64,000 nucleotides of DNA, taken from the NCBI RefSeq assembly GCF_036588685.1, contig NC_086377.1:58838001-58902000 (forward strand). The letters run 5' to 3'. How positions within the stretch are numbered: position 1 is the first letter of the stretch; each line of letters starts with the position of its first letter. Positions 14,781-52,904 of this stretch are shown here, piece after piece. This DNA comes from Mytilus trossulus. Taxonomy: Eukaryota. The notes below the pieces were generated by a model. That model saw only the letters and a program-made list of their open reading frames with translations, made no database searches and was not told where the DNA came from. Both the position numbers and the translations under genes were made by a program.

Positions 14781-15003
14781 ATGGCGACCAAAGAAGAGGA
14801 TAATTTTCTACGCGTTGTTTACTTAAACTACCGAGTAGGAACAACGGCGCTAAGGAGGTATTTTGACAGCGTCCATCCTAATTTGCCAGCCGATTTGTCA
14901 TCTCCATCAAATAAGGCAATACTCGCAAGCCTGCACAAACCACCTAGAGGACAAAGGAGAGTATTGTACCAGGAGCAATGGGATATTTTATACCCTCCTA
15001 CAG
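14781..15003 (+). CDS. Gene B coding exon 1: N-terminal part of a DZIP3-like HEPN domain
   Basis: Acceptor at 14707-14708, ATG 14781, donor ACAG|gtaatt (phase 1); EEDNFLRV..GTTALRRYFD..LYQEQWDILYP motifs typical of the family. Confidence 0.85.
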
Positions 15004-15456
15004 GTAATTTGAAAAAAATGGTTGAAAAAGATGTGGAAAATCAATTTAACCATGCCGTAATACAATCACAGTAATTAATAATAAACACTTGCTTTATGTG
15101 AAAAGGTGTGTATTAGTATCATAAGTCGTTATAAGAGCACACAATGGAAAATAACGCCCATTTATCTGTTTAATTACATCAGAAGAGATACAAATGAGAT
15201 ACATATTTTTTGGGAAACTCCTGTAAGAGTGACCCATCACAAAAAAAATTACTAGCTCCCCCTGCCTTGGATGCCCTTAAATCTTCTAAAAACAAAAAAA
15301 AATAACTTTTGTATAGCGGACACACTTGAAAAATATCTAAATAAAAAATGTTTAAAATGAATAATTCATTAGGATCTCCTCAGATTATCATTGAAGCGTT
15401 TGCGATGGAAAGGTGAAGAAAACGATGAGATATTTGATTTTAATACTTTTTTGTAG

Positions 15457-15701
15457 GGGCACCTGTAGTTTCTTCTGCTAAATTAGATGTTACTTTAATG
15501 GTTTGTCTTCTACGGAATTTACCACCAATGGTTGCTCCACCAACCCCGAATGGATTTGATGCCTTACCACTATCTAGTGACGTGTCTAATGGTGCTCACA
15601 TAGCTCGAATAAAATATTATAAAAATTTCATTGTTTCGCATTCAAAGGATGGAAAACTATCCGATGCTGATTTCAACAAAATATGGATTGATATGGATGT
15701 G
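15457..15701 (+). CDS. Gene B exon 2: HEPN core
   Basis: ttgtag|GGGCA...GATGTG|gtatga (phase 1-0); SSAKLDVTLMVCLLRNL..PPTPNGFDALP..IARIKYYKNFIVSH..DFNKIW. Confidence 0.85.
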
Positions 15702-16099
15702 GTATGATTATTTCATCTTTTAATCTTATTCAGCATGTGGTCGTTGCGTGACATCTGAGACAATGCGATTATAACTAAGAAACTTTAAAATAAGCAAAAT
15801 AATTTCTCATTTGAATATTTCCGTATTGATATTTCTCAGTTCCAACTTTAAAGTGAGATTGTGAGAAACACTTTGACAAAAACGGTACCACTTTTACTGC
15901 ACCAGAGGTACATTAAATTATACATACTAGAGGTGAAATAATCCAAATTTCGTAACCTTATACACACGTTAAAGATCGGATCAAACAAAAAAGACATAAA
16001 AATATAGATAAATTCCATATTGACATTTCAAAGTTCCAACATACAAAACTTAAAAAAAATCGAAATAAAAAAAAAATGTCTATAACTTTTTTTTTTATA

Positions 16100-16585
16100 C
16101 TTTTTGGAATTTTTGGTTCTCAATGCTCTTCAACTTTGTATTTGTTTTGCTTTACAATTTTTTTATCTAAGTGTCATTAATGAGTCTTAAGTAGACGAAA
16201 CGCGCGTCTTAAATTATAATCCTGGAACCTTGATAACTATTTACACCACTGTGTCGATGCCACTGCTGGTGGACGTTTCGTCACCAAGGATATCAACATC
16301 CCAGTAGTCACCACTTCGGTGTTGACAAAAATATCAATTGTAAAGTAATTTTAATAAATTTGTTGTTGACAAAACTTTAATGATTTCGAAAATATAATGA
16401 TTCTCCTATCCCAGGAATGGATAACCCTTAGTTGTTTTTGGCTCGACTTTTTTTTAAATTTTTGGTCCTAAATGCTCTTCAACTATGTTCTTGTTTGGCT
16501 TTACAACTATTTTGATCTGAGCGTCACTGATGAGTCTTATGTAGACGAAACGCGTGTCTGGCGTATTAAATTATTATCCTGGTAT
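16100..16585 (+). mobile_element. Retrozyme-like tandem repeat in gene B intron 2 with two hammerhead motifs 350 nt apart
   Basis: gtagacGAAA at 16191 and 16541; second copy (16520-16564) gcgtcaCTGATGAgtct(tatgt)agacGAAAcgcgtgTCtggcgt has an intact core, first copy is mutated (ttaatga). Confidence 0.85.
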
Positions 16586-17745
16586 CTATCTACACTTGTC
16601 AATTTTTAACTACACTAATCATCAAAACTAATGTCCAACTGAAGTCATATCAATGTTTTGATGCATGTAGAGGCAAAAAGAGGCGATTATTTTTCAAGTC
16701 CAAAATGAGCTTAGTTTACCGTTAATAAACCTCACAGACTGCTATCAATTTACGAAAATTAACGAATATCACGGCCCACACCATGTGTAAATTTCAAACA
16801 ATCTAGGGCTTCCATGAATTATTTCGATTCTAATAAGACAAATACGGTCATTAAAAAACTGAAGCGAGGGTGGGTATGCTGTGTGTGTGGCTGTTCTTTT
16901 TTACTCCCTGTTGGATAAAGCTCAAATATCTTTATAAATATGTAGCTTGCGTAGGTTATTTCGTGAACAGCTGCTTGTAAAAAAACAACTTTTTAATTCT
17001 TTAAATTCTCAAACCCAACATTTTCCATTTTTTATTTACATGTTTTTCTCGTAAGCTTCCGTCAAATCCAAAGTTGACATTAAGGAGCTGCCATATTGAC
17101 TTGCTGAAATGAGTAAATATGCGAATAATGCAATAGAATAGAAAATAAAACAAAACCTACCTCAAAAATCAGTTTTAATACAAGATCATACGAATTCCGA
17201 TGGTTCACGTAACAGAAAGCTTTCAACTTTAGCGGTTTCATTTGTATGACGTCAAGTTTTGAAATGACTTAAACGCGCCAAAAAGATTAAAAGACTTTCG
17301 CTGAATTTTATTTAATTTCTATTTTGTTGATTTTTCCGAGCTCTTGTGCATTACTTCTTTTTATAATGCATACGAATAAGAATAAAAGTTATTTTGTCTT
17401 TTTTAAATTTCACTTTTTAAAACAATAAAATCGGCAAAGGGTCTGCAAATAGGTTCCAATACATGTAGATTTACGTGGGAAGTATATTGTAACAGCCCCT
17501 ATTATATATATCTCTGAGTCTGCGCTAAGTATATTTTATCGAGAATTTTATCACAGTGTTGTTTACAAAACTACAGATGCACGTCATATTAGAATATTTA
17601 ATATTCCAAATCAAAACTATTTCAAGTTGTTACACTATGATTATCAAATTAAATGATCGAAGATAATTTAAAAGAAAACTTGTAATCATATTTGTTTTAT
17701 TTTGTTAAATATAATGTTTATGCATGTTCTTATTATATTCTAAAG

Positions 17746-17968
17746 GCCATTAATGGTTTAGGAAACCAACAAGATATAACAGATGCGGCAGATGCCAAAA
17801 CTAAAGTTTTAGACTTTAAAGCTATTATGGAACACTTGGATATTAGGATGGAAATTAAGCGAAATCGTAAACGATCTTTGGAGCATTCAGGAAAAATAGT
17901 CGAGCACGCCAGCAAAATAGCAAAACTTGAAACAACTGTTGAAAATTTGAACATTGGCCATGGCAAAG
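17746..17968 (+). CDS. Gene B exon 3: end of HEPN domain + coiled coil
   Basis: aaag|GCCATT...AAAG|gtgacg (phase 0-1); AINGLGNQQDITDAADAKTKVLD...EHASKIAKLETTVENL. Confidence 0.8.
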
Positions 17969-18054
17969 GTGACGGTTAATGAATAATGTTTAATAACAGA
18001 TCTTGATGCAAGACAAATACATCACATATAACTCTTATTTCTATAGGCAGCATT

Positions 18055-18345
18055 TTGATGATCCTTTTCAAATTCGTACTTTATTATGCTTGATTTTCAG
18101 TGATACTTTGGTAAGAATTTAGATGATCCTTTTCAAATTCGTACTTTTTTATGCATGATTTTTTAGTGATACTTTGGTGAGAGTTTAGATGATCCTTTTC
18201 AAATTTGTACTTTATTGTGCATGATTTTTAGTGATACTTTGGTGAGATTTAAATATTCCTTTTTAAATTCGTACTTAATTATTCATGTTTTTAGTGATAT
18301 TTTTGTGAGAGTTTAGAAGATCCTTTTCAAATTCGTAGTTTATAT
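18055..18345. repeat. ~65-bp minisatellite, ~4.4 copies
   Basis: gatgatccttttcaaattcgtacttt...gtgatactttggtgaga recurs at 18057, 18122, 18187, ~18251, ~18316. Confidence 0.85.
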
Positions 18346-18584
18346 AACTTTTGAATCGAACACCACTGTGATTCAAAATCTTATGCATCCTGGGTAATAT
18401 TTTCAAAAGTGTACACCAAAACATCGTGATTGGTTAATAATGTCATAAACAATGGAAATTCGAGCAATGAAGTGACGTTATTTTCGTTTGAGGGTACGAA
18501 CGATGAAATTACCCATGATTCTTTAGATTCCGAAACGGCCAATTGACGTACATAATTCTTATTCTGCTATTATAACGAGTATAT

Positions 18585-18960
18585 AGATATAGGAAGATGT
18601 GGTGTGAGTGCCAATGAGACAACTCTCCATCCAAATAACAATTCAAAAAATAAACCATTATAGGTTGAAGTACAGCTTTCAACACGGAGCCTTGGCTCAC
18701 ACCGAACAACAAGCTATGAAGGGCCCCAAAATTACTAGTGTAAAACCATTCAAACGGGAAAACCAAAGGTCTAATCTATATAAACAAAACGAGAAACGAG
18801 AAACACGTATATATTACATAAACAAACGACAACTACTGTACATCAGATTCCTGACTTAGGATAGGTGCAAACATTTGCAGCGGGATTAAACGTTTTAATG
18901 GATCCAAACCTTCTCCCTTTTTCTGAAACAATAGCATAACATCACAACATAGAAAAACAT
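18585..18960 (+). mobile_element. Abundant interspersed repeat family beginning gaagatgtgg..gccaatgagacaact
   Basis: Related copies at ~2685, ~10455, ~23570 (+) and ~5537-5660, ~8090-8185, ~8330-8670, ~21830-22280, ~36930-37145 (-). Confidence 0.75.
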
Positions 18961-19071
18961 TGATTGTTCTAAAACAAGCTTGATATCAACAAAAAGTGTG
19001 AAGCCTTTATAGATGTTTTGTTTTACTTGTTTTACTAGATTAGTTAATATGCGTTCATTCTTTTTTCGTAG

Positions 19072-19143
19072 TTGAGCAATCAAGTGCAGACAATGCTAGC
19101 AATATAGCAATACTAGAAACAACAGTGGAATACATTGAACAAG
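19072..19143 (+). CDS. Gene B exon 4: coiled-coil mini-exon
   Basis: ttcgtag|TTGAG...CAAG|gtaata; 72 nt, phase 1-1; DNASNIAILETTVEYIEQ repeats the end of exon 3. Confidence 0.75.
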
Positions 19144-19329
19144 GTAATATCAATAGTTTTCTAATCGAGCTTGATGTGTTATAAATACATTAGATATTAC
19201 ACATCTAGCTACATTTTATAACAAGTTTGATGCTAGTGATAAACTTTAAGCCTTTTCCAGAGCTTTTTTTTTAACTCGTTTTAGTTGATATCTGAATATG
19301 TTTTTGTACTTTTTAATAAAATTTTATAA

Positions 19330-19532
19330 AAGAGGGACGAAAGATATCAAAGGGACAGTCAAACTCATAAATCTAAAACAAACTGACAACGCCATGGCTA
19401 AAAATGAAAAAGACAAACAGAAAAACAATAGTACATATGACACAACATAGAAAACTAAAGAATTAACAACACGAACCCCACCAAAAAGTAGGGGGTGATC
19501 TCAGGTGCTCCGGAAGGGTAAGCAGATCCTGC
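19330..19532 (+). repeat. Interspersed repeat family beginning gagggacgaaagata..agggacagtcaaactcataaat
   Basis: Related copies at ~25110-25315 and ~45866-46055. Confidence 0.7.
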
Positions 19533-19584
19533 TAAATGAGAGAAAGAGTTAGTGGGTTCATTATATTTTCATCGTTATTTTCAG

Positions 19585-19629
19585 AAGTAAAGTCAGTAAG
19601 GATAGACGTCGATGTCAATGGTCCAAAAG
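19585..19629 (+). CDS. Gene B exon 5: linker micro-exon
   Basis: tttcag|AAGTA...AAAG|gtgaat; 45 nt, phase 1-1, open (EVKSVRIDVDVNGPK). Confidence 0.6.
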
Positions 19630-19823
19630 GTGAATACTTTATATAGACTATTTCACATACTTTTTTGCTACCCCAGCGAATGGGATAAATTATTATTTTA
19701 TAGATCAACTGTCAGAATTTAGTCCATTCTATGTGGTAAATTCTCTTTTATTTTTTTATTTCAATTTCTATTTTTTTTCATAATATGATGCGGATACATA
19801 CAAAGAGAGACATATAGATTCTT

Positions 19824-19967
19824 ACACTGCAACAAGTGTATTACGATATTTCTCCACTCGAGACAGTTAAATTTTATTATTTAAAGCGCGAGGCTTGCCG
19901 AGCCCTTTAAATAATAAAATTTAACTGTCGAGAGTGGAGAAATATCGTAATACACGAGTTATAGTGT
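19824..19967. repeat. Long palindromic core of a non-autonomous element; diverged second copy at ~20500-20665
   Basis: Arms 19836-19886 and 19905-19955 are almost perfectly complementary around cgcgaggcttgccgagcc. Confidence 0.8.
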
Positions 19968-21089
19968 TGGAATCTGTTTCTCTAATGCTTTTTATCGTTC
20001 TTTTTCAAAAAAAATCAGAAAATTGTGCTCTTTTTATGCGACGTCATCAGCTAAGGTCTCCTTTTTTGATGACGTCACAATAGGAAAATTGAGAAGAAAA
20101 CAAAACATTTTGACATCATAATCAAATTTCGACTAATCATTTGCCGAGAACAGATTTTTCACTAGTGAGGAGAAATATTTTTCTCACACCGGTCAGGAAA
20201 TGTGAAAATAGCACAAAAATTAGAGAAAACTAATTTTCCATGTACAACCCTTTTATTATCAAACCAAAATTATTTAGTTACTTTCATTTTTATTGTTTCT
20301 TTTATTTATTAAAAACAACTGATTTATTAAACCTACATTGTAACTAATAAGAATTAAGCCTCAGATATAATAAGGATTAATGGATTTGAAATGCCTCTAA
20401 AGACTGGTTGGTATAAATATACATGTTGAATGACTGCTTATGTTGAAAAATGTAATATATTGTATTTCATATATATGTACCAAGTTGTACTTTAAAAAAT
20501 AGATTCTACTACTGCATCGAGTGTGAAACGATATTTATCCACTCGAGACAGTCAAATCTTCAAATTTAAAACGCGAGTCTCGCTGAGCGTTTTACATATT
20601 TATTTAAAATTTAACTGTCAAGAGTGGATAAATATCAGATAACACCAGCTTCGGTGGTGGCACCTGTTTTTGTAATGATTATCTAACAACATATGCAGGC
20701 AAACTTATTTCTTCTTTTTGATTGATCTGCAAAAAGATGTGATCTTTCTATTTGACCTCATCAGGCATGGTCGCCTTTTTTCCTGCCGTCACATTAGGAA
20801 ATTCAAAGGAAATCAAGAAAATCGACGTCACAATTTGATTTTAACAAGAACTGAAATCAAACGAATCATACGTTAATTTTTTTTTTATAAAATGGGTGCC
20901 GAAAGGGATAAATTGACGATAAATTGGAGAAATAAAATTAACTATAAGAGGAAAACAACGACACAACAGAAGCACTAAAACACAACACACACGGAAACAA
21001 ACTATAAGATAACAATAGCCATTTTCCTGACTTAGGACGGGACATTTTAAGATAACATTTTAAGCAAATCACTTAAATTTGTTCATTAG

Positions 21090-21407
21090 GTGACTTTATG
21101 GAATTTAAAGACAAACTCATACATTCAACAATGCTTGACAAAGAGGTTTTGGATAACCTAATTTCTAAATGCGTTCTGACACTAGATGACAGAGAAGAAA
21201 TTGTTAACTGTGATAACCAATCATCTCGTAACAAAAAGCTCTTAAAATTACTCATCAATCGACCATACCACACACTCGGTATACTCGTTGAAGCAATGAA
21301 AGAGTCTGAGCAAAAGAGCCACACTTTACTGCTTTCCAAAATGGAGGCCAAGGTCGAAGACAATGTTATGACATTACAAAATGAACCACTCATAGATGGC
21401 TTATCAG
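21090..21407 (+). CDS. Gene B exon 6: CARD-like death-fold domain 1
   Basis: cattag|GTGAC...TCAG|gtaagc; 318 nt; VLDNLISKCVLTLDDREEI..QSSRNKKLLKLLINRP is a CARD pattern; same length as paralogous exon 50660-50977. Confidence 0.85.
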
Positions 21408-22313
21408 GTAAGCTTTATTTAAGCGGATTAAAAAGTTGGTTATTAACAGGTAGAAATTGTTAAAGTATTTACCAAATGTATTGAAACAAAAGCATTTGTA
21501 AATAGGAAACTGCTATATACACTTTATCAATTCGTTTGAAGTATTTGAGATTGTGATTTTCTTATTTGCGTATTACTTTCGTTTAGAATTGTCCTCGGAG
21601 TTCGGAGTTTTTGTTATTTTACATTAGAGTAACTGCGAAGTAACTCATAAATCGTACTTTCGTATTAATTTGAATTGTTGACACAATTGGTAATGTTTTT
21701 TTGTTATTCAATGTTAACTGTTTTGTATTTTATCCCAGTACACCATTTTGTCCCAGACTAAAGTTTTCTTTTTGACCTTGTTCTTAATATATATTTTGAT
21801 CTTTATCGTATTTAATGTGTGTCATAGATCAAATTTACTTGTTGAGTGTACGTTTTCTTGTTTAAGTCAATATATCTTTTTAATTGAGTTAATCATATAA
21901 GTCATTGGTTTTTTTCAGTGGGTTTTTTTCATTTTTAAATGTTACATTACTCATTCATGTTGAAGCGAAGGTTGGAACCTGTTTAAACGCGTTTCAATTA
22001 TATGAACCTGGCCTAAGTAAGGAATCTGTTCAAAAGCTGTCGTTTTTTGAAGTTTATAAGTGTTTCTCGTTTCTCGTTTAGATACAGATTACAGCAATGT
22101 TTTCCTGTTTGAATATTTTAACACTAGTATATGTGCATCCCTTTGTAGCTTTCTGTTCGATGTGGGACAAAGTTACATGTGTATGGCTATACCTTAACTT
22201 ATTATTGTTTACTTTGTACACAATGTGACTTAGTTTCAGAGTTGTCAAATTAGCACCTAACCAAATCTTCTTATTTCTATATAGAGTTTTTGTTATAATG
22301 TATTATATTTCAG

Positions 22314-22628
22314 ATACAGAGAAACAAATCGTTAAAGTAATCAAGTGTTATAACACAATAGTCCATAACATTGACATTGAAAAAACTGGAATTCTATACA
22401 AACTCCATGATATTTTAAGTGAGGAAGAGAATACAGAAATGACACCAATGGATGTTTCTGTGGAAGACAGAAATAGAGGAATTTTAGGAAAAATCATTGG
22501 ACACAATACTTCATCTGCCTACAAAATCTTCCTTGAAGTTCTTAAAGAAGATAGCTGTTATAATGAATATGCTACAAAAATAGAGGAAACAGATGTCACA
22601 CAATTTGACCTCCAGTTACTAAGTATTG
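22314..22628 (+). CDS. Gene B exon 7: CARD-like domain 2
   Basis: tttcag|ATACA...ATTG|gtaggt; 315 nt; EDRNRGILGKII..SAYKIFLEVLKED; homologous to 52365-52682. Confidence 0.8.
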
Positions 22629-22707
22629 GTAGGTCAACGAACAAAATATTAAAAAAAACCCCAACAAAATTAGACATTTATAATTTATTTTTACAACAAT
22701 GTTACTG

Positions 22708-22960
22708 TAAGGTGGTACCTAACACTAGAGGGAGATAACTCTGTAAAATCAGCTAAACGTTTAATTTACATTGTGTTGTTAAGGGAATATTAAGTTTTTG
22801 AATGATCAAAATAAGTATTTGTCATTGATAAAATGGTTGGTTCAAATGTTTTGAAATTTTTATATTTTTTGTCAAAGGGTCAAAGTAAATACTTTGTCGA
22901 AATTTTATAAAAATTAAACAAGCCAAATTAATTTTAGTGAAAGTGTTGGGTACCACCTTA
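22708..22960. mobile_element. MITE, ~250 bp
   Basis: TIR taaggtggtacctaacact / agtgttgggtaccacctta. Confidence 0.8.
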
Positions 22961-24376
22961 AGCCCCAATCCCACTAGACCAAGATCGCACCATGCTCTAT
23001 GCGATCTAAAATAAATTCATATCGTGGTGAGGTCGGGGTATGAGCGGCATGAAAATATAGATTTTCGTTGCTTTCACGATGCTACTAAGTCCTCATTACG
23101 CGTCTACAATGATCCCTCTACGATTATACCTCGTTCTTACCGGGCTTATTCTGCGACCTCACTATGCTTATCAAGATCTGTCTACGCTCATCACATTCTC
23201 ACTACGACCAAACCCCGAGTTATCCGATTGCAACACGATCTTACCACGCTTCTATTGCGATTATAGCACGTTCTTACCACGATTATACTACGTTCATACC
23301 GGAATTTTACTACGTTCTCAGCAATAACGTGAACATCGTGTTCCATATTAATACAGTCCCGTTCCTTCTTTTTTGATTAATACGTAGATTTCTAGAACAC
23401 GTACGCGTGGGTCGGTGGTAGGGGGTTATGTATAGGCAGAGGGAGCTCTGATAGTAACGAATCCTGATCAAGCAGAGATGTCGGACAGACCAATCCTACC
23501 TAAATTATACCCATTCCTTGTCCATAAAGCTCAAATGAAGATAGCAGAGATGACACAGATGTGTCAATAGATATAGGAAGATGTGGTATAAGTGCCATTT
23601 AGACAACTCCCCATCAAAGTAACAATTTATAACTGTAAACAATTTAAGGCAAAAGTACGGCCTTCAAAACGGAGCTTTGGCTCACACCGAAAAGCAAACT
23701 ATAATGGCACCCAAAAATTACTAGTGTAAAACCTTTCAAAATCAACGGTCTAATCTATATAAAAACGAGAAGCATGAGTTAGAGAAAATGGACGAGAAGT
23801 CCTTATTACATACAGACAAATAAAACCTGGAGAGATTTAATGTATTTTATGTGAAAATGACAATGAGAATGATGGTCGTAGTATGAACGTAGTCAAGTCG
23901 TAAGAAGAGCGTGATGAGGACGGCAAGGGCGTGCTAGAATCGAACTATGGTCGTGAACAGCGTGGTTTAGTCGTAGGGGAAGCGTATTTTGGTCGCGGCG
24001 AGAACGTGATGGTCGTAGTGAGATCGTTATAACGTCACTGTGAGATCGCAGTGCAGTGTCTCCGAATAGCATCATGCTTTCGCTACGCTAATGCTATGCT
24101 CTAGCTACGCTCTCGCTACGATGGTACAGCGACCTTTGCGATCCAACCGCAATCTAAGTGCGCTCTCACTACGATTCTACCACGATCCGATTTAGCCACG
24201 ACCACACCACGATTGTGTTGAACATGTTCAAAGTTGGCCACGCTTATTACGATCTTGAAGACCTCACCACGACCGTGATACGACCTTACTGAGATCTACA
24301 CGATCGTACTACGCTCATCAAAATTTGCATTTTGTCATAGATCGTAGTGCGATCGTGGCCTAGTGGGACTGCGGTA
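22961..24376. mobile_element. Non-autonomous DNA transposon (~1.4 kb, PIF/Harbinger-like termini) with another repeat inserted at ~23570-23770
   Basis: Imperfect TIR gccccaatcccactagaccaagatcgcac / gtgcgatcgtggcctagtgggactgcggt; many short acgat(c) subterminal motifs. Confidence 0.7.
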
Positions 24377-24559
24377 TTACAATTTCTTGTTTCCTTATAT
24401 GAAAACCCTTCAACATAAAAATGGTCGTCTTTAAGTTAAAACCATAAAAAAACAATATTTTGTATACATTTTAATAGAAACATAAGTCTTTTGTATTCAA
24501 TTATAAGCATAAAACCTTTAATACCTATTAGCATGTCGTAAAGTTATATTGTATTGCTA

Positions 24560-24945
24560 ATTTGTGAATTTCTCTATCCTGAATGTTCTTCCATTTATTT
24601 GTATTGTAGAACTGTCATGTAATGTTTTCAGTTTCGTGTTATATTTAACATTGTCATAAAAGCGGGAGGTTTGGCATGCCACAAAACCAGGTTCAACCCT
24701 CCATTTTTTTTCTTAAAATGTCCTGTACCAAGTCAGCGAAATAGCAATTGTTATCTTATTGTTCGTTTATGTGTGTTTTCCATTGTCGTTTTTTTTTGTT
24801 CCACTTCAGTGTTTCTGTTGTTTCATTGTTTTTTCTTATATTTGAGTTGTTTTCCTCAGCATTAGTTTGTAACCCGGATTTGTTTTCTCTCAATTGATTT
24901 ATGACGTTCGACGTTCGAACAGCGGTATACTACTGTTGCTATTTC
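24560..24945 (+). repeat. Interspersed repeat family ending gaacagcggtatactactgttgc
   Basis: Same terminus at ~3830-3858 and ~12760-12790. Confidence 0.65.
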
Positions 24946-24990
24946 TATGTTCTAATAAATGTTAATATATATATTTCCATTATTATGAAG

Positions 24991-25059
24991 GAAAACAATG
25001 GAGGGAAGGAAAGATAATTGAAAAAGAAAGAAAAAGAAGAAAAGAAAATGGAATGACTG
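24991..25059 (+). CDS. Gene B exon 8: basic micro-exon
   Basis: aag|GAAAA...ACTG|gtaaat; 69 nt, phase 1-1; GKQWREGKIIEKERKRRKENGMT; 3' end and donor conserved at 56376-56414. Confidence 0.7.
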
Positions 25060-26336
25060 GTAAATATAATTTCAAATATTGTCATTCCAATATGTATATA
25101 TTTGACAAAAGAGGGACGAGCGAAACCACAGGGACCGTTAAACTCATAAATCGAAAATAAACTGACAACGCCAAGGTTAAAAATGTAAAAGACTAACAGA
25201 CAAACAATAGTACACAACATAGAAAAATAAAAATTAAGCAACACAAGCTCCAACAAAAACTATAGGTGATTTCAGGTGCTCTGGAATGGTAAGCAGATCC
25301 TGAATCACATGTGGCATTTGACAATGTATACTTGAAATTATGTATGTTATGCAATTATGCCTATTACCAAACTATCCGCAGATTTACGCATTTTGTGTTA
25401 ATACAAGTTCATGTTGATGAACTTGATTGGAAGATAATTAACTGCAAGTTATTATCTACTAAAAGTTTCTGTAGAACATAATACAAATTTTGGTGCATAT
25501 AGTAAAACAGGAACTGCGTCTCATTCCATATAACTTTTATTCAGACCGCTTTTTGTTGCAAAATTATAAGTTTCTTATGAACAATGATGTAGACTTTTTG
25601 TCGTTTTACTTTTTTGACGATTGTTGAGCTGTACATGTACAGACTGTGTCCCTTGTCCTTTTATAACCATCTAACTGTGTGTTGATTTGCATGACGGGTG
25701 AAGCTTATATAAGATTTCGTCATACCACAGTTTTTATTTATTTGTTTCCCTTGATATTTTATTTTTTTGTATTTGATTTGTGTTATCAAAACGAGAAACT
25801 ATTGATTCATGGTGGCTATTTTTGGCTACCAGTTTTTAAAAGTGGAAGAAGCTGGAGTGTCGCAAGAGAACCACAGACCTTTGGTAAACATACGAAAAAT
25901 CATAGTCAATAAAGAATGTAGTCGAATGCACCTTACAAGAGAATGACTCAAAATCACAACATTAGTGTTGTCGGGAAAGTGATAGAAAAATTTGACTACT
26001 TGGACATCGAAGACCATCCTAATTAAGGGTTATAATTTAGCTCCTTGGTATCATATCAACCTTCGTATATGACTGATAAAAGATATAATCAAAGTAATTG
26101 AATTATTATTCTTCAAATTATTAACTATTTTCTGTTCTCGTTTGAATCAAAACAATATTTACATGTATTAGATTATTAAAAATATTTCGAGTTTATGTCA
26201 TTTATGAAGTAAAAAATGTTATAGTTGTTCTAAACATTTATGTATTTAAAAAAAGAAAGATGTTAAATTAATAGTATTGTTAATAGAATTATAACACAAT
26301 TAATAGGCTTCATGTTTTTTTTCATTACCAACATAG

Positions 26337-29300
26337 ATTTGATGATTGATAAAGTAGAAACATGGAAAAGGGATGACAGTCTTTATATCGAAACTAGAGC
26401 GTCTAATTATGTTTTAAACTGTGTCAATAAACACTCATGTGTAAGTGTAATAGGACCGTCCGGTTGTGGGAAAACGGCTCTTGTTCGACATGTTTCTCTC
26501 CAAATGGAACAAAATGGATACACTATATTAACTGTGATCGACGCGAGAGATATAACAGATAAGTATAAATCTGGCAGAAAAACATTGTACATTGTTGATG
26601 ACATATGTGGAAATTTTACTGCCAACCAAACTCGGTTAGAAGAATGGAAAAAATCAATGGTTGACTTAAGGAGTATTTTAGAATTTGGTAATTGTAAGTT
26701 GATTTTAACTTGCAGACTTCAAGTTTTTCAAGATAAGGGGTTTGAAAATTTAGATATTTTCAAAACATGTGAATGTAACTTAATTTCTAAAGATTTAGCT
26801 TTAACAATTATTGAAAAAGAGACCATGACAGCACAGTACTTTGGGGAACATGCTTCAGAAGGATTGAAACACTTAGGGGAATATGATTTTCTCCCCCTTT
26901 TATGTAAATTTTATTATGTAGAGAAAGACAATCCACAATTTAAACTAGACATGTTTTTCAATGATCCTTTTTCCTTTTACAAATATGATTTGACTCATAT
27001 GTACAACGATTGTAAAGAAGGTAAGTACAAATACTGCGCTCTACTATTGTTAGTTATCTTCAACAACGGGTTAAAAGAGAAGAACATTACAGGTAAGGAT
27101 CCTAAAGTTTTGGAGATTATAGAAGATCTCATAGAGGTATGCGACATAGAGGAAAATATTACAGGTAGAAAACTAAAGAACCAGATTGACATTCTGATAG
27201 GAACATTTGTGACTTATGATGAAGGCACATACCAAACAATCCATGACAAGCTGTTTGATTTCCTAGCTTTTTTTTTTGGAACGCAACATCAAATTATAAA
27301 CATATTGATAAAACATGCCGAAGACAGATTTATTCGTGAGCGATTTGTTTTTAAAGATTACAATGAAAGTACACATTATTCTATACCTATTTCTGATTTC
27401 AAATTGCAATTAATGTACATGAAAAGAGTATTTGACGATATTATAGGTTCAAGTAAAGTGAATACAAACATAGTAGAAAATGAAAATTTTAAAAATGTAA
27501 AATTCCGCACTATGATACTTGATTTCATGAAAAATCTTTCCAAACATGAAATAACTATCATCATGAAGAAAGCAAACACTAATTTTCTCAATACCATGTT
27601 TGTCCTGAGACAGAATGATATACAAGACAGAGGTAAAGATATGTCTTATGAATATAAATGTTTTGGTATCATTTTACCCGATGATATGATACAGCAATAC
27701 ATTGAGAAATGGTTTGATGCTTTGACAATAACTATTTCCACAGAGGCATTTTTGGGGGAGAACAGGCTTGTCAAATGTGGGAAATTTCAAACCGCCTTGA
27801 ATTCCTACATAAGACAAATAAACGTCGCTTCTATCATTCAGACTGGAAGTTCAGATTTCCTCAATACAATGTTTGTCATAACAGAAAATGGTTCTCAAGA
27901 TATGACTCAGAAACAAAATGCACGTTTTGGTATTGATATTCCAGAGGATTTGTTACAGCACTACATTGCCAGATGGTTTGACGATTTGACAAAACATGTC
28001 GGGAGGATGATAGTAAGGAGAAATCATGGTATGAGTTACTTGCATTCAGGTAAGCATAAAACATTGATGCTTGACGAATTCATGAACAAGAATAGACCAT
28101 TGACGAATCCTACATTTCGTATTGCCCTACGCACTTACATGAGGCAGCTAACTACAGTCAAAATTGCGTCACTCATTCATACCGCAGAGGACGCTTTCCT
28201 TAATACAATGTTTGTCATGACAGAGAATGACATTAACGACAAAGCTGAGAGCCGATATGAATGGTTCGGTATTGTTATTCCTGATGAAATTTTACAACAA
28301 TACATTGAAAAATATTTTCATCGCCTGACAAACGAATATAGCGTGGTGACAGATATACATAAAAATAGAGCATTGAGAAATATAAAAGTTCACACTGCCT
28401 TACGAACGCACATGAAACAACTTACAAGAGAGGAAATCGCTTTACTTATTCAGAATTCCGTGCATATATTTTTCAATATAATGTTTGTTATGACAGAGAA
28501 GGATATACAAAATAGTGAACAAAGCCAATTTGCATGTTTTGGTATTGTTATTCCGGATGATCTGTTACAGCAATACATTCAAAGGTGGTTTGATGAGTTG
28601 ACCAAAACGCATACAGTAGAGGCTGCCATAAGTCAAAATAGACCATTGGTTAGTGACAAATTTCTAAGTTCTGTACGTACTCACTTGAGACAACTTACCA
28701 TAGAAAACATCGCTTTAATCATTCAAACTACAAAGGCAGATTTTATTGATAAATTGTTTGTGATGACCGAAGCGGATAACCGAGACAACGCTGCAAACCG
28801 ATATGAATGTTTTGGAATTGTCATTCCAGATGAACTGTTACAGCCATATATTGAGAAGTGGTTTAATTATTTAATCAAAACGTTTTTTGTAGTGTCAGCA
28901 ATATCTAAAAATAGACCACTAAGTAATGTTAAATTTCGCAGGGCTGTGCGTACACACATGAAGCAACTAACCACAAAAAGCATCGCTTCAATCATTCAGA
29001 CATCATATGAGGATTTTATCAATACAATGTTTGTCATGTCAGATGAGGACATCAAAGACAACGCTGAGAACCAACATGAATGTTTTGGTATCATTATTCC
29101 TAATGATCTATTACAGCAATACATTCAGCGATGGTTTAATGTGTTGAAAAAAACACAGTGTGTAGCAACTGCCATAGAGAAAAGTAGACCAATGATGAAT
29201 GTTACATTTCGCAGAGCTGTATGTTCCTATATGACACTACTAACCACAGAAAACATCGTTTCGATCATCGAAAATACAAACGAGGATTTTATTAATAAAA

Positions 29301-32300
29301 TGTTTGTTATGACAGAGGATAACATCAAAGACGACGCTGAAAACAAATACCAATGTTGTGGTATTGTAATTCCTGATGATTTGGTACATCAATACATTGA
29401 GAGGTGGTTTTATGATTTGACCAAATCGCAGTTTGTAGAGACCACCATAGTAAAGAATAGACCGTTAAGTAATGTTAAATTTCGTAATGATGTACGTACC
29501 TTCATGAGCCAACTTGCCACAGAAAACATCGCTTCAATCATTCAGAATACACATGAGGATTTCCTGAATTTAATGTTTGTCATGGCAGAGGATGACATCA
29601 AAGAAAACGATGAGAATCGATATAACTGCTTTGGTATTGTTATTCCTGTTGATAGGATACAGCAATACATCCAGAGGTGGTTCAATTATTTGACCAACAC
29701 GGATTCGGTAGAGGACATGATAGATCGAAATAGACCATTGTTGAACGTTACGTTTCGTTGTGCTTTACGTGACCACATAAGACAACTTACCACTGAAAAC
29801 ATCGCTTCAATCATTCAGAATACACATGAGGATTTCCTGAATCTAATGTTTGTCATGACAGAGGATGACATCAAGGACAACGCTGATAATCGATATGAAT
29901 GGTTTGGCATTGTTATTCCTGATGATCTTTTACATCAATATGTGCAAAGGTGGTTTGAAGTAACGAAGGAAACAAGTGTATTAAAAAAGACCATAGAAGA
30001 TGGAAGGTCTGTTACATATTATACCACAAGCAATGGATTGGAAATATTATTAAATAGAAGTAGACCATGGCAAAATTTTAAATTTCGTAGTGCCCTACGA
30101 ACTTATTTGAACCAGTTAAGCATAGAAACAGTCACTTTTCTTATTGAGCGTAGAGATGATTTTTTTGTCAATATAATGTTTGTCATGACAGAAGATGAAA
30201 TAAAAGACAACTCTAAGAATCGATGGGAACAAGTTGGTATCGTTATTCCCGAAGACCTACTACAAATATACATTGGTAATTGGTTTGAACGTTTGATTCA
30301 AACCAGTGAGTTCAACAGATTCATAGACCGAAACAGACCTTTAAAGAATTTTGCTTTCCGTACTGCCTTGGGAAAATTTATGAGACAAATAAACTCAGAC
30401 AAAATCGCTTTAATCATTAGGAATGCAAAGGATAATTTTATCAATAATATGTTTGTCATGACAGAAGAGGAAATACAAGAAAACTCTGCTGATCGATATT
30501 ACTGTTTTGGTATTGTTATTCCTGATAATCTGTTAGATGACTATATCAAAAGATGGGTTAATTCCTTACTCAGAACCAATGTACTAGAAAAATTCATAGA
30601 TCAAAGTAGACCACTGAAAAATGAAACATTTCGGAAAGCGTTAAGTAACTTCTTGAGACAACTAAGCGCAAAAAACATTGTTTCAATAATTACGAATGCA
30701 AAAGATAATTTTGTCAATCAGATGTTTGTTATGGCAGAGGAGGACATCAGAGACAACGAAAAGAACCAGTATAAAAATTTTGGAATTGTAATTCCCGATG
30801 ACATGTTACAACAATACATTGAGAGGTGGTTTGATGATTTGACAAAATCGAAGTGTGTGGAGGCCACCTTGAATAAGAATAGATCATTGACAAATGTTAA
30901 TTTTCGTAACGCTGTTCGTTCACACATGTGTCAGATAACTGAAGATAACGTCGCTTCAATCATTCAAACTACAACAGTTACTGCTGATTTTGTCAATGTA
31001 ATGTTTATTCTGACAGACGAGGAGATAAAGGAGAACTCTGAGAACCGATATGAATGTTATGGTATTATCATTCCTGAAGGTTTGTTACAGGATTATATTC
31101 AGAGGTGGTTTGGTGATTTAACCAAAGCGCATTCGGTAGTGGACGTGATTGATAAAAATAGACCATTAGTAAATGATACTTTTCGTAGTGCTATACGAGC
31201 CCACATGAGACAACTAACTACAGAATATATCGCTTCAATCATTCAGACAACAAATGAGAATTTCCTGAATTCAATGTTTGTAATGGCAGAGGATGACATC
31301 AAAGAAAACGCTAAACACGGACATGTTTGTTTTGGCATTGTAATTCCAGATGACCTATTACAGCAGTACATCGAGAAGTGGTTTAATGATTTAACGAAGA
31401 CCAAATCGGTGAAGGAATTTATGGATAATTGTAGGCCTTTAAACAACGGACTATTCCGTACAAGTTTGCGTAGCTACACAAAAGAACTAAACATAACAGA
31501 AATCAGTTCACTCATTCAGACTGGAAGTAGTGATTTCCTTAACACGCTTTTTGTCATGACAGAGGATGACATAAAAGAAAACACTGAAAATCAAATCGAT
31601 TGTTTCGGTATAGTAGTTCATGATGATATTTTACAGCAATACATCGAGAGATGGCTTCTTCATTTGTCTGAGAGATCTGAGACAAACAGGTACATAAATG
31701 AAAATAGACTTTTAATTAATGTTACCTTTTTTACTGGATTGCAAACTTTCATAAGACACTTAAACACAGGACAGATCACCTTTTTCATTCAGACAGGAAG
31801 CAATGATTTTCTTAATAGAATGTTTGTTATGACAGAGGGGGATATTAAAGGCAACAGTAAGAATCGATATGAATGTTTTGGTATCGTGATTCCTGATGAT
31901 GTATTTCTATTACAGCAATATATTGCGAGATGGTTTCATAGCGTGACTGAATCCAATTCGGTGACAGAATATATGAAGGTTAATCGGCCTCTGTTGAATG
32001 GTACTTTCCGGACTGCGTTGTGTAGCCACATGAGACAACTAGACAATGAAGTAATTAGAACCCTTATTCAGACCGGGACTAGTGACTTCCTCAATACAAT
32101 GTTTGTCCTGTCAGAGAATGACATAGCCATTGACAATGGTGAATATCGGGTTGAATGTTTTGGTATTGTTATTCCTGATGAGATGTTACAGCAATACATG
32201 GATAGATGGTTGGATTGCATGACAAAGGCTGACTCCGTGATAGAATTCGTAGGTGTTAATAGGTCTTCTATGGGAGTTATATTGCAAGCCGAATGGGAAG

Positions 32301-32332
32301 CATATATGAGCCAGATGGATTCAGACAAATAA
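26337..32332 (+). CDS. Gene B exon 9: nSTAND3-type P-loop NTPase followed by 17 x 91-aa tandem repeats
   Basis: catag|ATTTG; uninterrupted ORF; Walker A GPSGCGKT (26453-26476), Walker B LYIVDDICG, sensor LILTCR, PLLC, HDKLFDFL; MFV anchors 273 nt apart (28208, 28481, 29027). The nine exons sum to 7506 nt = 2501 aa + stop. Confidence 0.93.
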
Positions 32333-49936: not shown

Positions 49937-50659
49937 CATACTTGACCATCGAGTTAAAAAAAAAATGCAATTTGCAAAAACTAAAAGTATACAGTTTTAT
50001 CAACTGTTAATTAAAGAACAAATTGCATAAATTTTCATTACATGATATAAATTAGAACCTTATAGTAACCACATAGTTTTTCTTGCTTTTTTTGAAATCT
50101 TACTGAAATCTGTCATTTTTCAAATTGAATCAATTATAGCGACCATTAAAAAAACCGCTTTCATAACCGTTTTGGTAAAACAGTGACATCAAACAATAAC
50201 TGTTCTGCGCTTACATGACAAATTTATGCTTTACATTCATTATTGAAACAATTTTTAAAGGATTACAGATTTTTATCATAACTGAAGAAATATATGAGAT
50301 CTTCACACTTTAGAAATAAATTATTCTTGACTTAGATGTAGAACTTCTCAGAGATACTTTGACGAAAAGTATGGAGAAAATACGATTTGAATCATATTTC
50401 ATTGTCCTTACAAAATACATGCACATGTATGCCTAAAAGGTACGATATGTAAACTTTTTTTTCTAATTAAGCACTTATCATGTTTCATCATATGATATAT
50501 ATTAAAAGGGGCATAATCCAATTAGAATCATAACTCATCGTCCTTACACATGCATTACCTGTATGTATTTTTAAGATAAGATATGTTAAAAAAAAGGATG
50601 CGACAATCGATGATTTCTCTAATATAGCACACATCATGTATCATCTTTCTTTATTTCAG

Positions 50660-50977
50660 GTACTTACCAAGAATTCAAGGTTGACCTCATACAGTCAACA
50701 ATACTTGATACGGATGTTTTAGATAACTTAATTTCAAAGTGCATTCTAACTCTTGACGATAGAGAGGAGATTGACAGCCTTTTAGATCAATCAAATCGTA
50801 ACCAGAAACTCTTAGAAATACTGATGCATCGACCATACAATACCTTTCCTGATTTTGTTGAAACGATGAAAAAATCGGATCAAAAGTGTCACAGTTCTCT
50901 TGTTGAAAGAATGGAGGCCAAAGTCTTAGATAAAGACTTGACTTTACAGAAAGCACAACTCACAGATGAAACAACCG
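50660..50977 (+). CDS. Gene C CARD-like domain 1 exon
   Basis: tttcag|GTACT...ACCG|gtaatg; 318 nt, open; VLDNLISKCILTLDDREEI. Confidence 0.85.
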
Positions 50978-51416
50978 GTAATGTACCTTATTTTGAAATG
51001 AGTGAAACAATTTTTTTTTGTCATGTCAAAGGCTTTCATATGTTATTATTTTGTATGGATGGTGCTTAGTGTCGTGTTACGGAGCGCACATAAGCTTTTG
51101 ATTGTTCAAAGTACGAACACTCCAAAGTTTAAAGATGATAACCAAGTTCTATGCTGAGCCATGAACTGCTTGTAGTTCTTACGTGTATTACGCTTTGATT
51201 TTGTAATAACCCAATCATAGATTAACTTCGACGGATTTGTATCCACATTTTTACAATTTGGTGTCTCATGCTCTTTAACTTCTTTTTTATTTTCGTTTAA
51301 CAGCTTGTCTGTTTCAACAGCCAATGACAATTTTTCAATGAATTCACTAAATAACGGTGACTTATAGTTGCTGATCTCCAATTCTGTTAGTTAACTACAT
51401 TAAAGGATGCTTATTA

Positions 51417-52246: not shown

Positions 52247-52364
52247 TAATAAACTATAAACGATTTTCAACTTTTTGCGTTATATTTCTAAAAGCAAGGA
52301 CATCATATCCTTTCGTAAACATTTGCTTTCAATAACGTTTATTTTGTAATCTTATATATTTCAG

Positions 52365-52682
52365 GTATAAAAGATGCTGTTAAATTAATCAAATGGTATA
52401 AAATTATAGTTCATGAAATTAGCATCGACAAAACTGGAATTCTAGACAAGCTATTTACTAAAGATGTTATAGACCGTGAGATTCATGAAAAACTTTCATC
52501 AGTAAATATGACTTCACACGAGAAAAATAGAAGACTTTTGGGAAAACTTATAAGAAAAGATATTTCGTCTGCCTTTCCAATTTTCCTTGAAGTTCTGAGA
52601 GAAGATAGCTGTTATAAGGATTATGCCGAAAAGATAGAAGAAACACATGTCACACAGAACGACTTAGAATTATTGAATATTG
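52365..52682 (+). CDS. Gene C CARD-like domain 2 exon
   Basis: tttcag|GTATA...ATTG|gtaggt; 318 nt, open; EKNRRLLGKLI..SAFPIFLEVLREDSCY. Confidence 0.82.
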
Positions 52683-52904
52683 GTAGGTTATAAATATTTT
52701 GAATATGTATCATAATGATATGAAATTTGTTACAATATAACAGATTGCTTTTTAAGATCTACAATTAGTCTTTTTTTTTAATTTAAATTGTAAAAAGTAA
52801 AATCACAAAAAGTACTGAACTCAGAGGAAAATCAAATCGAAACGTCCCTAATCAAGGCAAAATTCAAATGACAAAACACATACAAAACGAATGGACAACA
52901 TTAC

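What the first reader, a model, noticed from the sequence alone, without database searches (positions are those of the whole stretch)
14781..32332. NLR-like receptor with HEPN + tandem CARD + nSTAND3 and an unrecognised 91-aa repeat array in the sensor position
Seen: nine phase-compatible exons give one open ~2501-aa protein, ending in 17 tandem 273-nt repeats (consensus ~ DFLNxMFVMTEDDIKDNxENRYECFGIVIPDDLLQQYIERWFxxLTKTxxVxxxIxxNRPLxNxxFRxALRxYMRQLTTExIASLIQT). Known: STAND receptors follow effector-NTPase-repeat sensor logic, DZIP3-type HEPN domains are predicted RNases, CARDs recruit caspases or adaptors, and bivalve nSTAND3 proteins commonly end in ankyrin repeats. Inference: this is an innate-immune sensor with two effector types (RNA cleavage and death-fold signalling), a NOD2-like tandem CARD arrangement reached independently, and a sensor repeat that matches no LRR/ANK/TPR/WD40/ARM pattern I recognise.
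Basis: partly seen in the sequence, partly recalled or inferred. Interest (0 to 1): 0.92.

Follow-up and report, generated by a model that had tools for sequence, protein, structure and literature searches.

The report
Mussel STAND receptor with new repeat
This is a real, spliced mussel gene for a 2,501-residue NLR-like immune-type protein whose tail is 17 copies of a 91-residue helical unit found only in Mytilus, made by copying the piece that follows the protein's own nucleotide switch; the gene class is known, this repeat is not.

Summary
Nine exons (14781-32332, + strand) all have AG/GT splice sites and compatible phases. They give 7,506 nt, which is 2,501 codons plus a stop.

Domains found:
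- HEPN_DZIP3 in exons 1-3.
- A coiled linker.
- CARD in exon 5, and a second CARD-like domain in exon 6 (profile-profile 98%).
- An nSTAND3 NTPase with an NB-ARC-like fold (Z 14.8 to Dark and CED-4).
- One degenerate plus 17 clear 91-residue units.

One RNA contig joins the HEPN/coiled exon to CARD1 with exactly the 117 nt of the two mini-exons between them. The CARD2-to-NTPase junctions rest on phases and orthologue models only.

The repeat has no Pfam, PDB-sequence or confident fold match. It looks only like a generic alpha-solenoid (Z 6.9 or less), although the AlphaFold model is confident (pLDDT 92.6). It matches 53 of 1.84 billion cluster representatives, and every named one is Mytilus.

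The unit is homologous (hhalign 96%, E 1e-9) to the single module after the winged helix in ankyrin-type relatives. Intermediate relatives carry 3-8 units followed by ankyrins.

The HEPN motif is K-N-x4-H, not Rx4-6H, so RNase activity is doubtful. The sensor role is untested.

The scan noted ankyrin-type relatives elsewhere in this genome.

The parts
14781..15003 (+). Exon 1: start codon and N-terminal part of the HEPN_DZIP3 domain; donor GT, ends in phase 1
   Evidence: Weak Pfam HEPN_DZIP3 match, profile 4-41. 93% identical to residues 1-75 of the M. coruscus orthologue P0001. Splice and phase check.
15457..15701 (+). Exon 2: core of HEPN_DZIP3. It carries the motif K-N-F-I-V-S-H at 15621-15641 in place of Rx4-6H
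   Evidence: Pfam 59.9 bits, E 3.1e-16. Motif alignment with 35 relatives. Coordinates.
17746..17968 (+). Exon 3: last HEPN helix plus the charged coiled segment
   Evidence: In P0001 the HEPN match runs to residue 179, inside this exon. RNA contigs start at 17745 in runs X2 and X3 (table 8).
19072..19143 (+). Exon 4: 72-nt mini-exon (phase 1 to 1), coiled linker
   Evidence: tblastn of P0001. Splice check. Together with exon 4b it accounts for the 117 unplaced nt between the exon 3 and exon 5 pieces of X2 contig 9.
19585..19629 (+). Exon 4b: 45-nt mini-exon (phase 1 to 1)
   Evidence: tblastn of P0001 residues 253-270, 78% identity. AG/GT sites and phase.
21090..21407 (+). Exon 5: CARD 1 (phase 1 to 1)
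   Evidence: Pfam CARD 31.7 bits, E 1.6e-7. RNA contigs in X1, X2 and X3. X2 contig 9 joins it to exon 3.
22314..22628 (+). Exon 6: second CARD-like death-fold domain (phase 1 to 1), one uninterrupted exon
   Evidence: No Pfam hit on its own. 52% identical to P0003 346-450, where Pfam CARD matches. hhalign against the CARD1 family gives 98%, E 1.7e-13. RNA contigs cover 22325-22629 without a gap, and one continues 22 nt beyond the donor.
24991..25059 (+). Exon 8: 69-nt lysine/arginine-rich linker exon (phase 1 to 1)
   Evidence: Match to P0001 443-467. AG/GT sites and phase. No RNA evidence obtained.
26337..27343 (+). Start of exon 9: NBD-HD1-WHD core of the nSTAND3 NTPase. Walker A is at 26453-26476, Walker B at 26585-26602, and the WHD motif T-I-H-D at 27236-27253
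   Evidence: Pfam nSTAND3 81.9 bits. AlphaFold model pLDDT 89.5. Foldseek top hit is EfAvs5, then NLRP, Apaf-1 and Avs4. VIA Z 14.8 to Dark and 14.5 to CED-4 over model residues 1-336.
27344..27583 (+). Unit 0: degenerate first copy of the repeat unit, directly after the winged helix
   Evidence: Repeat profile positions 19-89, E 3.5e-6 genome-wide. Same secondary-structure pattern as the repeat units in the model.
27584..32329 (+). Array of 17 units of 91 aa (273 nt). Loop insertions lie at 27992-28057 (R2) and 29990-30046 (R9). The stop codon is at 32330-32332
   Evidence: AlphaFold model of four units: pLDDT 92.6, pTM 0.86. Each unit has a positional orthologue in M. coruscus.

Best explanation
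An intact, transcribed nine-exon gene of Mytilus trossulus encodes a 2,501-residue STAND (nSTAND3) protein with NLR-like logic. The order is:
- an N-terminal HEPN_DZIP3 domain with Lys in place of the catalytic Arg;
- a coiled linker;
- two CARD-type death-fold domains;
- an NBD-HD1-WHD nucleotide switch;
- a rigid alpha-helical superstructure built from one degenerate and 17 clear copies of a 91-residue unit.

The unit is not a borrowed repeat family. It is the family's own single module that follows the winged helix, amplified in tandem. Relatives show the stages:
- one copy plus ankyrins;
- three copies plus ankyrins;
- five to eight copies, then two more, then ankyrins;
- 7-18 copies and no ankyrins (this clade).

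Inferred, not shown: the array keeps the switch closed and binds a ligand along its variable loop face. Nucleotide exchange then oligomerises the protein, which clusters the CARDs to recruit CARD-bearing caspases or adaptors. The HEPN domain acts as an RNA-binding or weak nuclease module.
For: Gene model:
- All nine exons have canonical sites and fitting phases.
- Orthologue P0001 (M. coruscus, 2,447 aa, 92% identity) carries HEPN, CARD and nSTAND3.
- X2 contig 9 (758 nt) places exon 3 and exon 5 with 117 nt between them, equal to exons 4 plus 4b.
- Introns outside multicopy elements have near-zero depth.

Domains.

Switch fold.

Repeat:
- 17 units.
- Confident four-unit model with pTM 0.86.
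- Only 53 of 1.84e9 cluster representatives match, and all named ones are Mytilus.

Origin of the unit:
- A single copy, profile positions about 18-85, sits after the NTPase core in 30 ankyrin-type relatives.
- hhalign gives 96.4%, E 1e-9.
- The graded series of architectures.

Constraint on the array:
- Each unit is 78-97% identical to its positional orthologue in M. coruscus, against about 43% between units.
- dN/dS among units has a median of 0.39.

Variable surface: entropy peaks at unit positions 42-56, the same loop that carries the R2 and R9 insertions.
Against: - No functional data of any kind.
- The CARD2 to exon 8 to NTPase junctions have no RNA evidence here.
- The RNA nature of runs X1-X3 is a guess by the tool, supported only by the intron-less contig.
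- The one raw RNA run laid (X24, another species label) had no reads on the exons.
- The HEPN domain lacks the Arg of Rx4-6H.
- In sister proteins the units sit between the switch and the ankyrins, so they need not be the ligand-binding part.
- Variability at positions 42-56 could simply be a relaxed loop.
Confidence: 0.6

Rival explanations
1. The array is a spacer, oligomerisation scaffold or purely autoinhibitory arm, not a ligand sensor. This clade lost its ankyrin sensor and acts as a helper, adaptor or decoy for other nSTAND3 receptors.
For: The unit derives from the linker module after the winged helix. In the sister clade 5-8 units precede a terminal ankyrin array. Array length and unit order are conserved 1:1 between two species rather than being reshuffled. 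Overall dN/dS is 0.39.
Against: The array is terminal and very long (1,580 residues). Variability is concentrated in one loop and short helix per unit, with insertions at the same site, as expected of a binding face. C-terminal units diverge faster (78-85% identity) than the switch (95.8%).
Confidence: 0.3
2. The unit is only a very divergent member of a known alpha-solenoid class (HEAT, ARM or MIF4G-like), so the repeat is not a new kind.
For: All structural neighbours are alpha-solenoids: CRM1, importins, AP2, PP2A-B56, MIF4G, PUF and designed helical repeats.
Against: The best scores are Z 6.9 (70 residues) and Foldseek E 0.011 with TM 0.31 or less, below the tool's stated noise level for helical repeats. 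The period is 91 residues, with six helices and a two-strand bridge, against 35-45 residues for HEAT and ARM. No Pfam repeat model matches. The origin from a post-WHD module is shown.
Confidence: 0.15
3. The nine-exon model fuses two transcription units. Under this rival, the HEPN/coiled exons and the CARD-NTPase exons are mostly made as separate proteins or alternative isoforms.
For: The neighbouring paralogue (50659-62207) has CARD exons but no HEPN match in tblastn. Relatives exist with CARD only or HEPN only. No read evidence for exon 6 to 8 to 9.
Against: X2 contig 9 links exon 3 to exon 5 through exactly 117 nt. X3 contig 18 extends 194 nt upstream of exon 5. Three M. coruscus models carry HEPN, CARD and nSTAND3 together. 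All phases fit. Exon 9 begins in phase 1 behind a polypyrimidine tract and AG.
Confidence: 0.1

Closest known systems
Mytilus nSTAND3-ankyrin proteins with HEPN_DZIP3 and/or CARD N-termini (for example P0008, P0011, P0022, P0036)
   Same: Same NTPase family (37-45% identity), same N-terminal domain set including tandem CARDs, and the same post-WHD module, which is the ancestor of the unit.
   Different: They end in ankyrin repeats. This clade has no ankyrins and 7-18 copies of the amplified module instead.
Bivalve HEPN_DZIP3-NACHT receptors (Pinctada fucata, PMC9646362)
   Same: N-terminal DZIP3-type HEPN on a STAND NTPase with a C-terminal repeat domain. Expanded, clustered immune-type gene families.
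   Different: The NTPase is NACHT, not nSTAND3. The repeats are LRR, TPR or WD40. 194 of 202 Pinctada HEPN domains keep Rx4-6H, whereas this gene has K-N-x4-H.
Bacterial Avs5 (SIR2-nSTAND3-helical repeats; PDB 9jap, 9nc9; bioRxiv 10.1101/2025.07.08.663546)
   Same: Best Foldseek match of the switch module (E 2.4e-7). Same Pfam NTPase family. Effector-switch-helical repeat logic.
   Different: The effector is SIR2. The repeats are TPR, Sel1 or PPR. There is no relation to the 91-residue unit.
Apaf-1 / CED-4 / Dark and vertebrate NOD2
   Same: CARD(s) before an NBD-HD1-WHD switch. Fold match Z 14-14.8 over 270-290 residues. NOD2 also has two CARDs.
   Different: Different NTPase clades (NB-ARC and NACHT). 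Their sensors are WD40 or LRR. They have no HEPN. The tandem CARD arose within the Mytilus family.

Membership tests
STAND NTPase, nSTAND3 (PF20720) | Match to the family model above the curated cut-off | tested here: met
   81.9 bits against a cut-off of 27.2, E 5.2e-23, residues 25-174 of the exon 9 ORF.
STAND NTPase, nSTAND3 (PF20720) | Walker A (GxxxxGK[ST]) and Walker B (hhhhDD) intact | tested here: met
   G-P-S-G-C-G-K-T at 26453-26476 and L-Y-I-V-D-D at 26585-26602.
STAND NTPase, nSTAND3 (PF20720) | NBD-HD1-winged helix fold | tested here: met
   AlphaFold pLDDT 89.5. Foldseek to EfAvs5, NLRP9, NLRP3 and Apaf-1, E 2e-7 to 1e-5. VIA Z 14.8 and 14.5 to Dark and CED-4 over model residues 1-336.
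STAND NTPase, nSTAND3 (PF20720) | Nucleotide-dependent oligomerisation | not testable with these tools
   Needs biochemistry.
HEPN (DZIP3/hRUL138 type, PF18738) | Match to the family model above the cut-off | tested here: met
   Exon 2 alone scores 59.9 bits against 27. The orthologue P0001 scores 102.4 bits.
HEPN (DZIP3/hRUL138 type, PF18738) | Catalytic Rx4-6H motif | tested here: not met
   The motif is K-N-F-I-V-S-H (15621-15641). The Lys form is conserved in this subclade, while ankyrin-type relatives have R-N-x3-H.
CARD (PF00619) | Match to the family model above the cut-off (first domain) | tested here: met
   Exon 5 scores 31.7 bits against 23.9, E 1.6e-7.
CARD (PF00619) | Second domain is also a CARD | tested here: met
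   No direct Pfam or PDB-sequence hit. It is 52% identical to P0003 346-450, where Pfam CARD matches. hhalign of the exon 6 family against the CARD1 family gives 98%, E 1.7e-13 over 86 columns.
CARD (PF00619) | Six-helix death fold; homotypic binding to a CARD partner | not tested
NLR in the strict sense (NACHT plus LRR) | NACHT NTPase domain | tested here: not met
   NACHT scores 15.2 bits against a cut-off of 26.7, while nSTAND3 scores 81.9.
NLR in the strict sense (NACHT plus LRR) | Leucine-rich repeat sensor | tested here: not met
   No LRR model matches at E up to 10.
Known solenoid repeats (ANK, LRR, TPR, WD40, ARM/HEAT, PUF) | Sequence match to a repeat model | tested here: not met
   None in Pfam for one unit, three units or the whole ORF. 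None in PDB sequences with the unit profile.
Known solenoid repeats (ANK, LRR, TPR, WD40, ARM/HEAT, PUF) | Fold match well above background | tested here: inconclusive
   Foldseek best E 0.011, TM 0.31 or less. VIA-wide best Z 6.9 over 70 residues. Second look best Z 6.1. All are generic alpha-solenoids below the tool's stated noise level. No single-unit model was made.
DUF7661 (PF24697), listed for these proteins in precomputed annotation | At least one stretch that matches on its own | tested here: not met
   The whole-protein 51.8 bits is a sum over units, and zero stretches pass. One unit gives 13.2 bits, E 0.09. There is no match anywhere in the genome at E 0.01.

The most novel reading that the evidence does not exclude
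A STAND receptor lineage built a new ligand-sensing superstructure from its own post-winged-helix linker module by tandem amplification, and then discarded the ancestral ankyrin sensor. This would be a documented route, with living intermediates, by which NLR-like proteins invent sensor domains. The 91-residue unit would be a new repeat fold class.
Probability: 0.3. Interest if true: 0.7.

Novelty: new variant of a known kind. Interest (0 to 1): 0.55.

Why it matters
Bivalves have very large, fast-changing families of STAND receptors, and the origin of their sensor domains is an open question.

In this case the origin of a sensor-position repeat can be traced step by step within one genus. The single linker module, the short arrays ahead of ankyrins and the pure 17-unit array all still exist.

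The unit is absent from Pfam and from solved structures. In precomputed annotation it is mislabelled through a summed weak DUF7661 score. A proper family model would therefore correct the annotation of dozens of Mytilus proteins.

The gene also shows that 'HEPN = RNase' should not be assumed for this subclade.

Tried and rejected
- **Pfam on one unit, three units, unit 0 and the region between the NTPase and the repeats.** Only sub-threshold hits (DUF3977, RQC, prok_STING, DUF7661). I rejected them as summed chance matches of homologous units.
- **PDB sequence search** with the unit profile and with exon 6. Nothing below E 0.3.
- **ESM Atlas** on two units. No usable hit.
- **Winged-helix idea for the unit,** prompted by the weak RQC hits. 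Rejected: the model places the true winged helix (hairpin plus T-I-H-D) before unit 0, and known NB-ARC structures align only up to model residue about 336.
- **Raw RNA reads of run X24.** No reads on the exons, so no start, end or expression level could be read.
- **The look-up of encoding contigs for the M. coruscus orthologue DNA,** wanted for dN/dS.
- **Literature searches** for nSTAND3, HEPN plus Mytilus, STAND NTPase plus bivalve, and NLR, mussel and ankyrin. No paper describes this repeat.
- **The joined nine-exon protein** was never assembled for a search or a fold. Exons were searched singly by reference.
Full report
**1. What is in the sequence**

The + strand holds a 2,006-codon ORF at 26312-32332. 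TRF reports a 273-nt period inside it. Splitting the translation at the recurrent F-[LIVF]-N-x-M-F-V motif gives 17 consecutive units.
- Thirteen units are exactly 91 residues.
- R2 is 113 and R9 is 110 residues, each with an insertion.
- R12 and R16 are 93 residues.
- The last unit stops after 81 residues.

The units are 36-62% identical to R7. Invariant positions are F1, F6, G25, I26, Y36 and R58 (alignment A1). In a six-frame search of the whole assembly each unit scores E 1e-28 to 6e-41. A degenerate copy, unit 0, lies directly upstream and scores E 3.5e-6. The array is far beyond chance.

**2. The gene model**

tblastn of the closest database protein placed eight blocks. That protein is P0001, from M. 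coruscus, 2,447 aa and 92% identical. A ninth 45-nt exon was found with P0001 residues 253-270.

I checked the exons one at a time:

| Exon | Coordinates |
|---|---|
| 1 | 14781-15003 |
| 2 | 15457-15701 |
| 3 | 17746-17968 |
| 4 | 19072-19143 |
| 4b | 19585-19629 |
| 5 | 21090-21407 |
| 6 | 22314-22628 |
| 8 | 24991-25059 |
| 9 | 26337-32332 |

Every acceptor is AG and every donor is GT. Every split codon begins with G. No exon has an internal stop. The lengths sum to 7,506 nt, which is 2,501 codons plus a stop. Everything was done exon by exon by reference.

**3. Transcript evidence**

HEPN-to-CARD link:
- Run X2 holds a 758-nt contig (record 9). Its positions 510-731 lie on 17745-17966 (exon 3) and positions 77-392 lie on 21088-21403 (exon 5).
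- The 117 unplaced letters between them equal exon 4 (72 nt) plus exon 4b (45 nt).
- The 76 and 27 letters at the contig's two ends fit the start of exon 6 and the end of exon 2 by length only.
- X3 record 18 (460 nt) covers exon 5 and runs 194 nt further upstream.

Exon 6:
- Records 13, 14, 15, 20 and 21 cover 22325-22629 without a gap. Exon 6 is therefore one piece, unlike the M. coruscus model, which cuts an intron into it.
- Record 14 continues 22 nt past the donor.

Depth:
- Depth is about 4-55 on exons and near zero on unique intron sequence.
- It is enormous on three intronic multicopy elements.

Limits of this evidence:
- The tool only guesses that X1-X3 are RNA. The intron-less contig is what argues for it.
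- The raw RNA run X24, from another species label, has no reads on the exons.
- The exon 6 to 8 to 9 junctions rest on three things: phase, the acceptor context at 26335-26336, and orthologue and paralogue models that carry CARD and nSTAND3 together.

**4. Organism**

The assembly's contigs C5 (88,129,055 bp) and C11 (71,253,669 bp) have the same lengths as the contigs that carry RefSeq Mytilus trossulus proteins. G000 is therefore M. trossulus. No identical protein was returned by the 5.8-billion-protein search.

**5. N-terminal domains**

HEPN:
- HEPN_DZIP3 is clear. Exon 2 scores 59.9 bits and the orthologue scores 102.4 bits over residues 53-179.
- An alignment with 35 relatives shows that the ankyrin-type proteins carry R-N-x3-H (Rx4H).
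- This gene and its subclade carry K-N-F-I-V-S-H instead. The catalytic Arg is Lys and the spacing is one residue longer.
- In Pinctada, 194 of 202 DZIP3-type HEPN domains keep Rx4-6H, and that motif is the basis of the RNase prediction (PMC9646362). RNase activity is therefore doubtful here.
- The Lys form is conserved across species, so the domain is under constraint.

CARDs:
- Exon 5 is a CARD (31.7 bits).
- Exon 6 has no Pfam or PDB-sequence match of its own.
- It is 52% identical to P0003 346-450, where Pfam CARD matches best.
- The profile of exon 6 homologues aligns with the profile of CARD1 homologues at 98% probability, E 1.7e-13 over 86 columns.
- Tandem and even triple CARDs also occur in ankyrin-type paralogues. 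This is a family trait.

**6. The switch**

- nSTAND3 scores 81.9 bits. Walker A, Walker B and a WHD T-I-H-D motif are intact.
- The AlphaFold model of 26336-27856, built with 50 homologues, has pLDDT 89.5 and pTM 0.82. It shows NBD, helical HD1, a winged helix with its hairpin, three helices, unit 0 and then R1.
- Foldseek puts EfAvs5 (SIR2-STAND) first, followed by NLRP9, NLRP3, Apaf-1 and Avs4. Avs5 is itself annotated with the nSTAND3 model (bioRxiv 10.1101/2025.07.08.663546).
- VIA-align gives Z 14.8 to Dark, Z 14.5 to CED-4 and Z 14.0 to RPP1.
- All of these alignments end at model residue about 327-336. Unit 0 therefore starts where known NB-ARC cores end.

**7. The repeat: fold**

- Four units (28742-29833), with an alignment of 28 unit windows from this gene, its paralogues and database fragments, give pLDDT 92.6 and pTM 0.86.
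- Each unit has six helices and a two-residue strand pair. The high pTM over four units indicates fixed packing between units, that is, a solenoid-like rod.
- Foldseek against the PDB has no hit below E 0.01, and TM is 0.31 or less.
- The Foldseek-independent search of 48,161 chains peaks at Z 6.9 over 70 residues. The second look peaks at Z 6.1.
- All neighbours are generic alpha-solenoids: HEAT, ARM, MIF4G, PUF and designed repeats. The tool's own note puts the noise level for helical repeats at about Z 13.
- I conclude there is no recognisable family. I cannot claim a new fold, because no single unit was folded alone.

**8. The repeat: distribution and origin**

Distribution:
- The unit profile finds only 53 of 1.84 billion cluster representatives at E 0.001 or better.
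- All those with names are Mytilus. The rest come from unnamed Logan assemblies.

Architectures found by running the profile over the homologues and mapping ankyrin motifs:

| Class | Examples | Layout after the switch |
|---|---|---|
| Typical relatives (30 proteins) | P0019-P0064, e.g. P0022, P0036 | One partial copy (profile positions about 18-85), then ankyrins |
| P0020 | P0020 | Three units, then ankyrins |
| About 45%-identity clade | P0008-P0016 and loci L012-L014 | 5-8 units, a gap, two more units, then terminal ankyrins |
| This clade | P0001-P0006, P0010, L011, both window genes | 7-18 units and no ankyrin |

- hhalign of the repeat profile against the single-copy module of the ankyrin-type proteins gives 96.4% probability, E 1e-9.
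- The array is thus a tandem amplification of the family's own post-WHD module. This agrees with another first-stage note (s1-820585), which I tested here.

**9. The repeat: evolution**

- Each unit is 78-97% identical to the unit at the same position in M. coruscus, against about 43% between units. The same insertions occur in R2 and R9.
- The array therefore predates the species split and is not being homogenised.
- The switch is 95.8% identical and the repeats 89.9%. The last units are the most divergent.
- Among canonical units, median dS is 0.97 and median dN/dS is 0.39. The duplications are old and under purifying selection.
- In 63 units of the clade, the core hydrophobic positions are nearly fixed.
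- Variability peaks at positions 42-56, at the end of the long helix, the loop and the short helix. This is where the R2 and R9 insertions sit.
- This pattern fits a variable binding face. It also fits a merely tolerant loop.

**10. Mechanism**

Shown:
- Architecture.
- Partial splicing.
- Folds.
- Origin of the repeat.
- Constraint on the array.

Inferred from established STAND and NLR behaviour:
- The C-terminal superstructure holds the switch closed and receives the signal.
- Nucleotide exchange drives oligomerisation.
- Clustered CARDs recruit CARD partners.

The HEPN role is open because of the Lys. The main rival is that the array is an arm or scaffold rather than the sensor, because in sister proteins it sits in front of ankyrins.

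**11. Novelty**

- HEPN-STAND-repeat receptors are known in bivalves (PMC9646362). Lineage-specific expansions with HEPN, death-fold and STAND domains are described in PMC8195603.
- The proteins of this clade are already in public databases as uncharacterised products.
- New here are the recognition of the 91-residue unit as a Mytilus-restricted repeat family without any model, its derivation from the post-WHD module with surviving intermediates, and the Lys-type HEPN.
- I class this as a new variant of a known kind.
- The scan's first stage also noted ankyrin-type nSTAND3 genes on other pieces of this genome. Those notes are unchecked.

Noticed in passing
window 50659-62207 (+): A second paralogue lies in tandem. 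It has CARD1 (50659-50967), CARD2 (52358-52683) and an NTPase-plus-repeat exon from about 57081 with about 14 units. The big exon is broken into at least four reading-frame pieces (57424-59631, 59619-60281, 60329-61717, 61596-62210) and has a frame change near 57412-57428. tblastn found no HEPN exons. It is probably a pseudogene, unless these are assembly errors.
   Followed up: partly
G000 C5 58.06 Mb (L011), 62.75-62.91 Mb (L012-L014); C11 3.116 Mb (L015): All multi-unit genes of this genome lie on one chromosome. There is one more ankyrin-less gene with 9 units (L011), and three genes of the intermediate type with 5-6 units, a gap and 2 more units (L012-L014). L015 is a typical single-copy relative.
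   Followed up: partly
window 18300-19100, 19300-19700, 22700-23100: Intronic stretches have contig depths of 10,000-250,000 in all runs and many rearranged joints. These are highly multicopy, transcribed mobile or satellite-like elements. A 65-nt tandem repeat (4.5 copies) lies at 18053-18343.
   Followed up: no
window 22477-22576 versus P0001 residues 428-445: The public M. coruscus gene model cuts an intron into the second CARD exon and shifts frame. M. trossulus RNA contigs cover this stretch without a gap, so the public model is probably wrong there. It also lacks 17 residues in the NTPase region.
   Followed up: partly
whole gene 14781-32332: No identical or near-identical M. trossulus protein came back from the 5.8-billion-protein search, although other RefSeq M. 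trossulus nSTAND3 proteins did. This gene may be unannotated or marked as non-coding in the public annotation.
   Followed up: no
window 63360-63518: A run of 159 N (assembly gap or mask). Left untouched.
   Followed up: no
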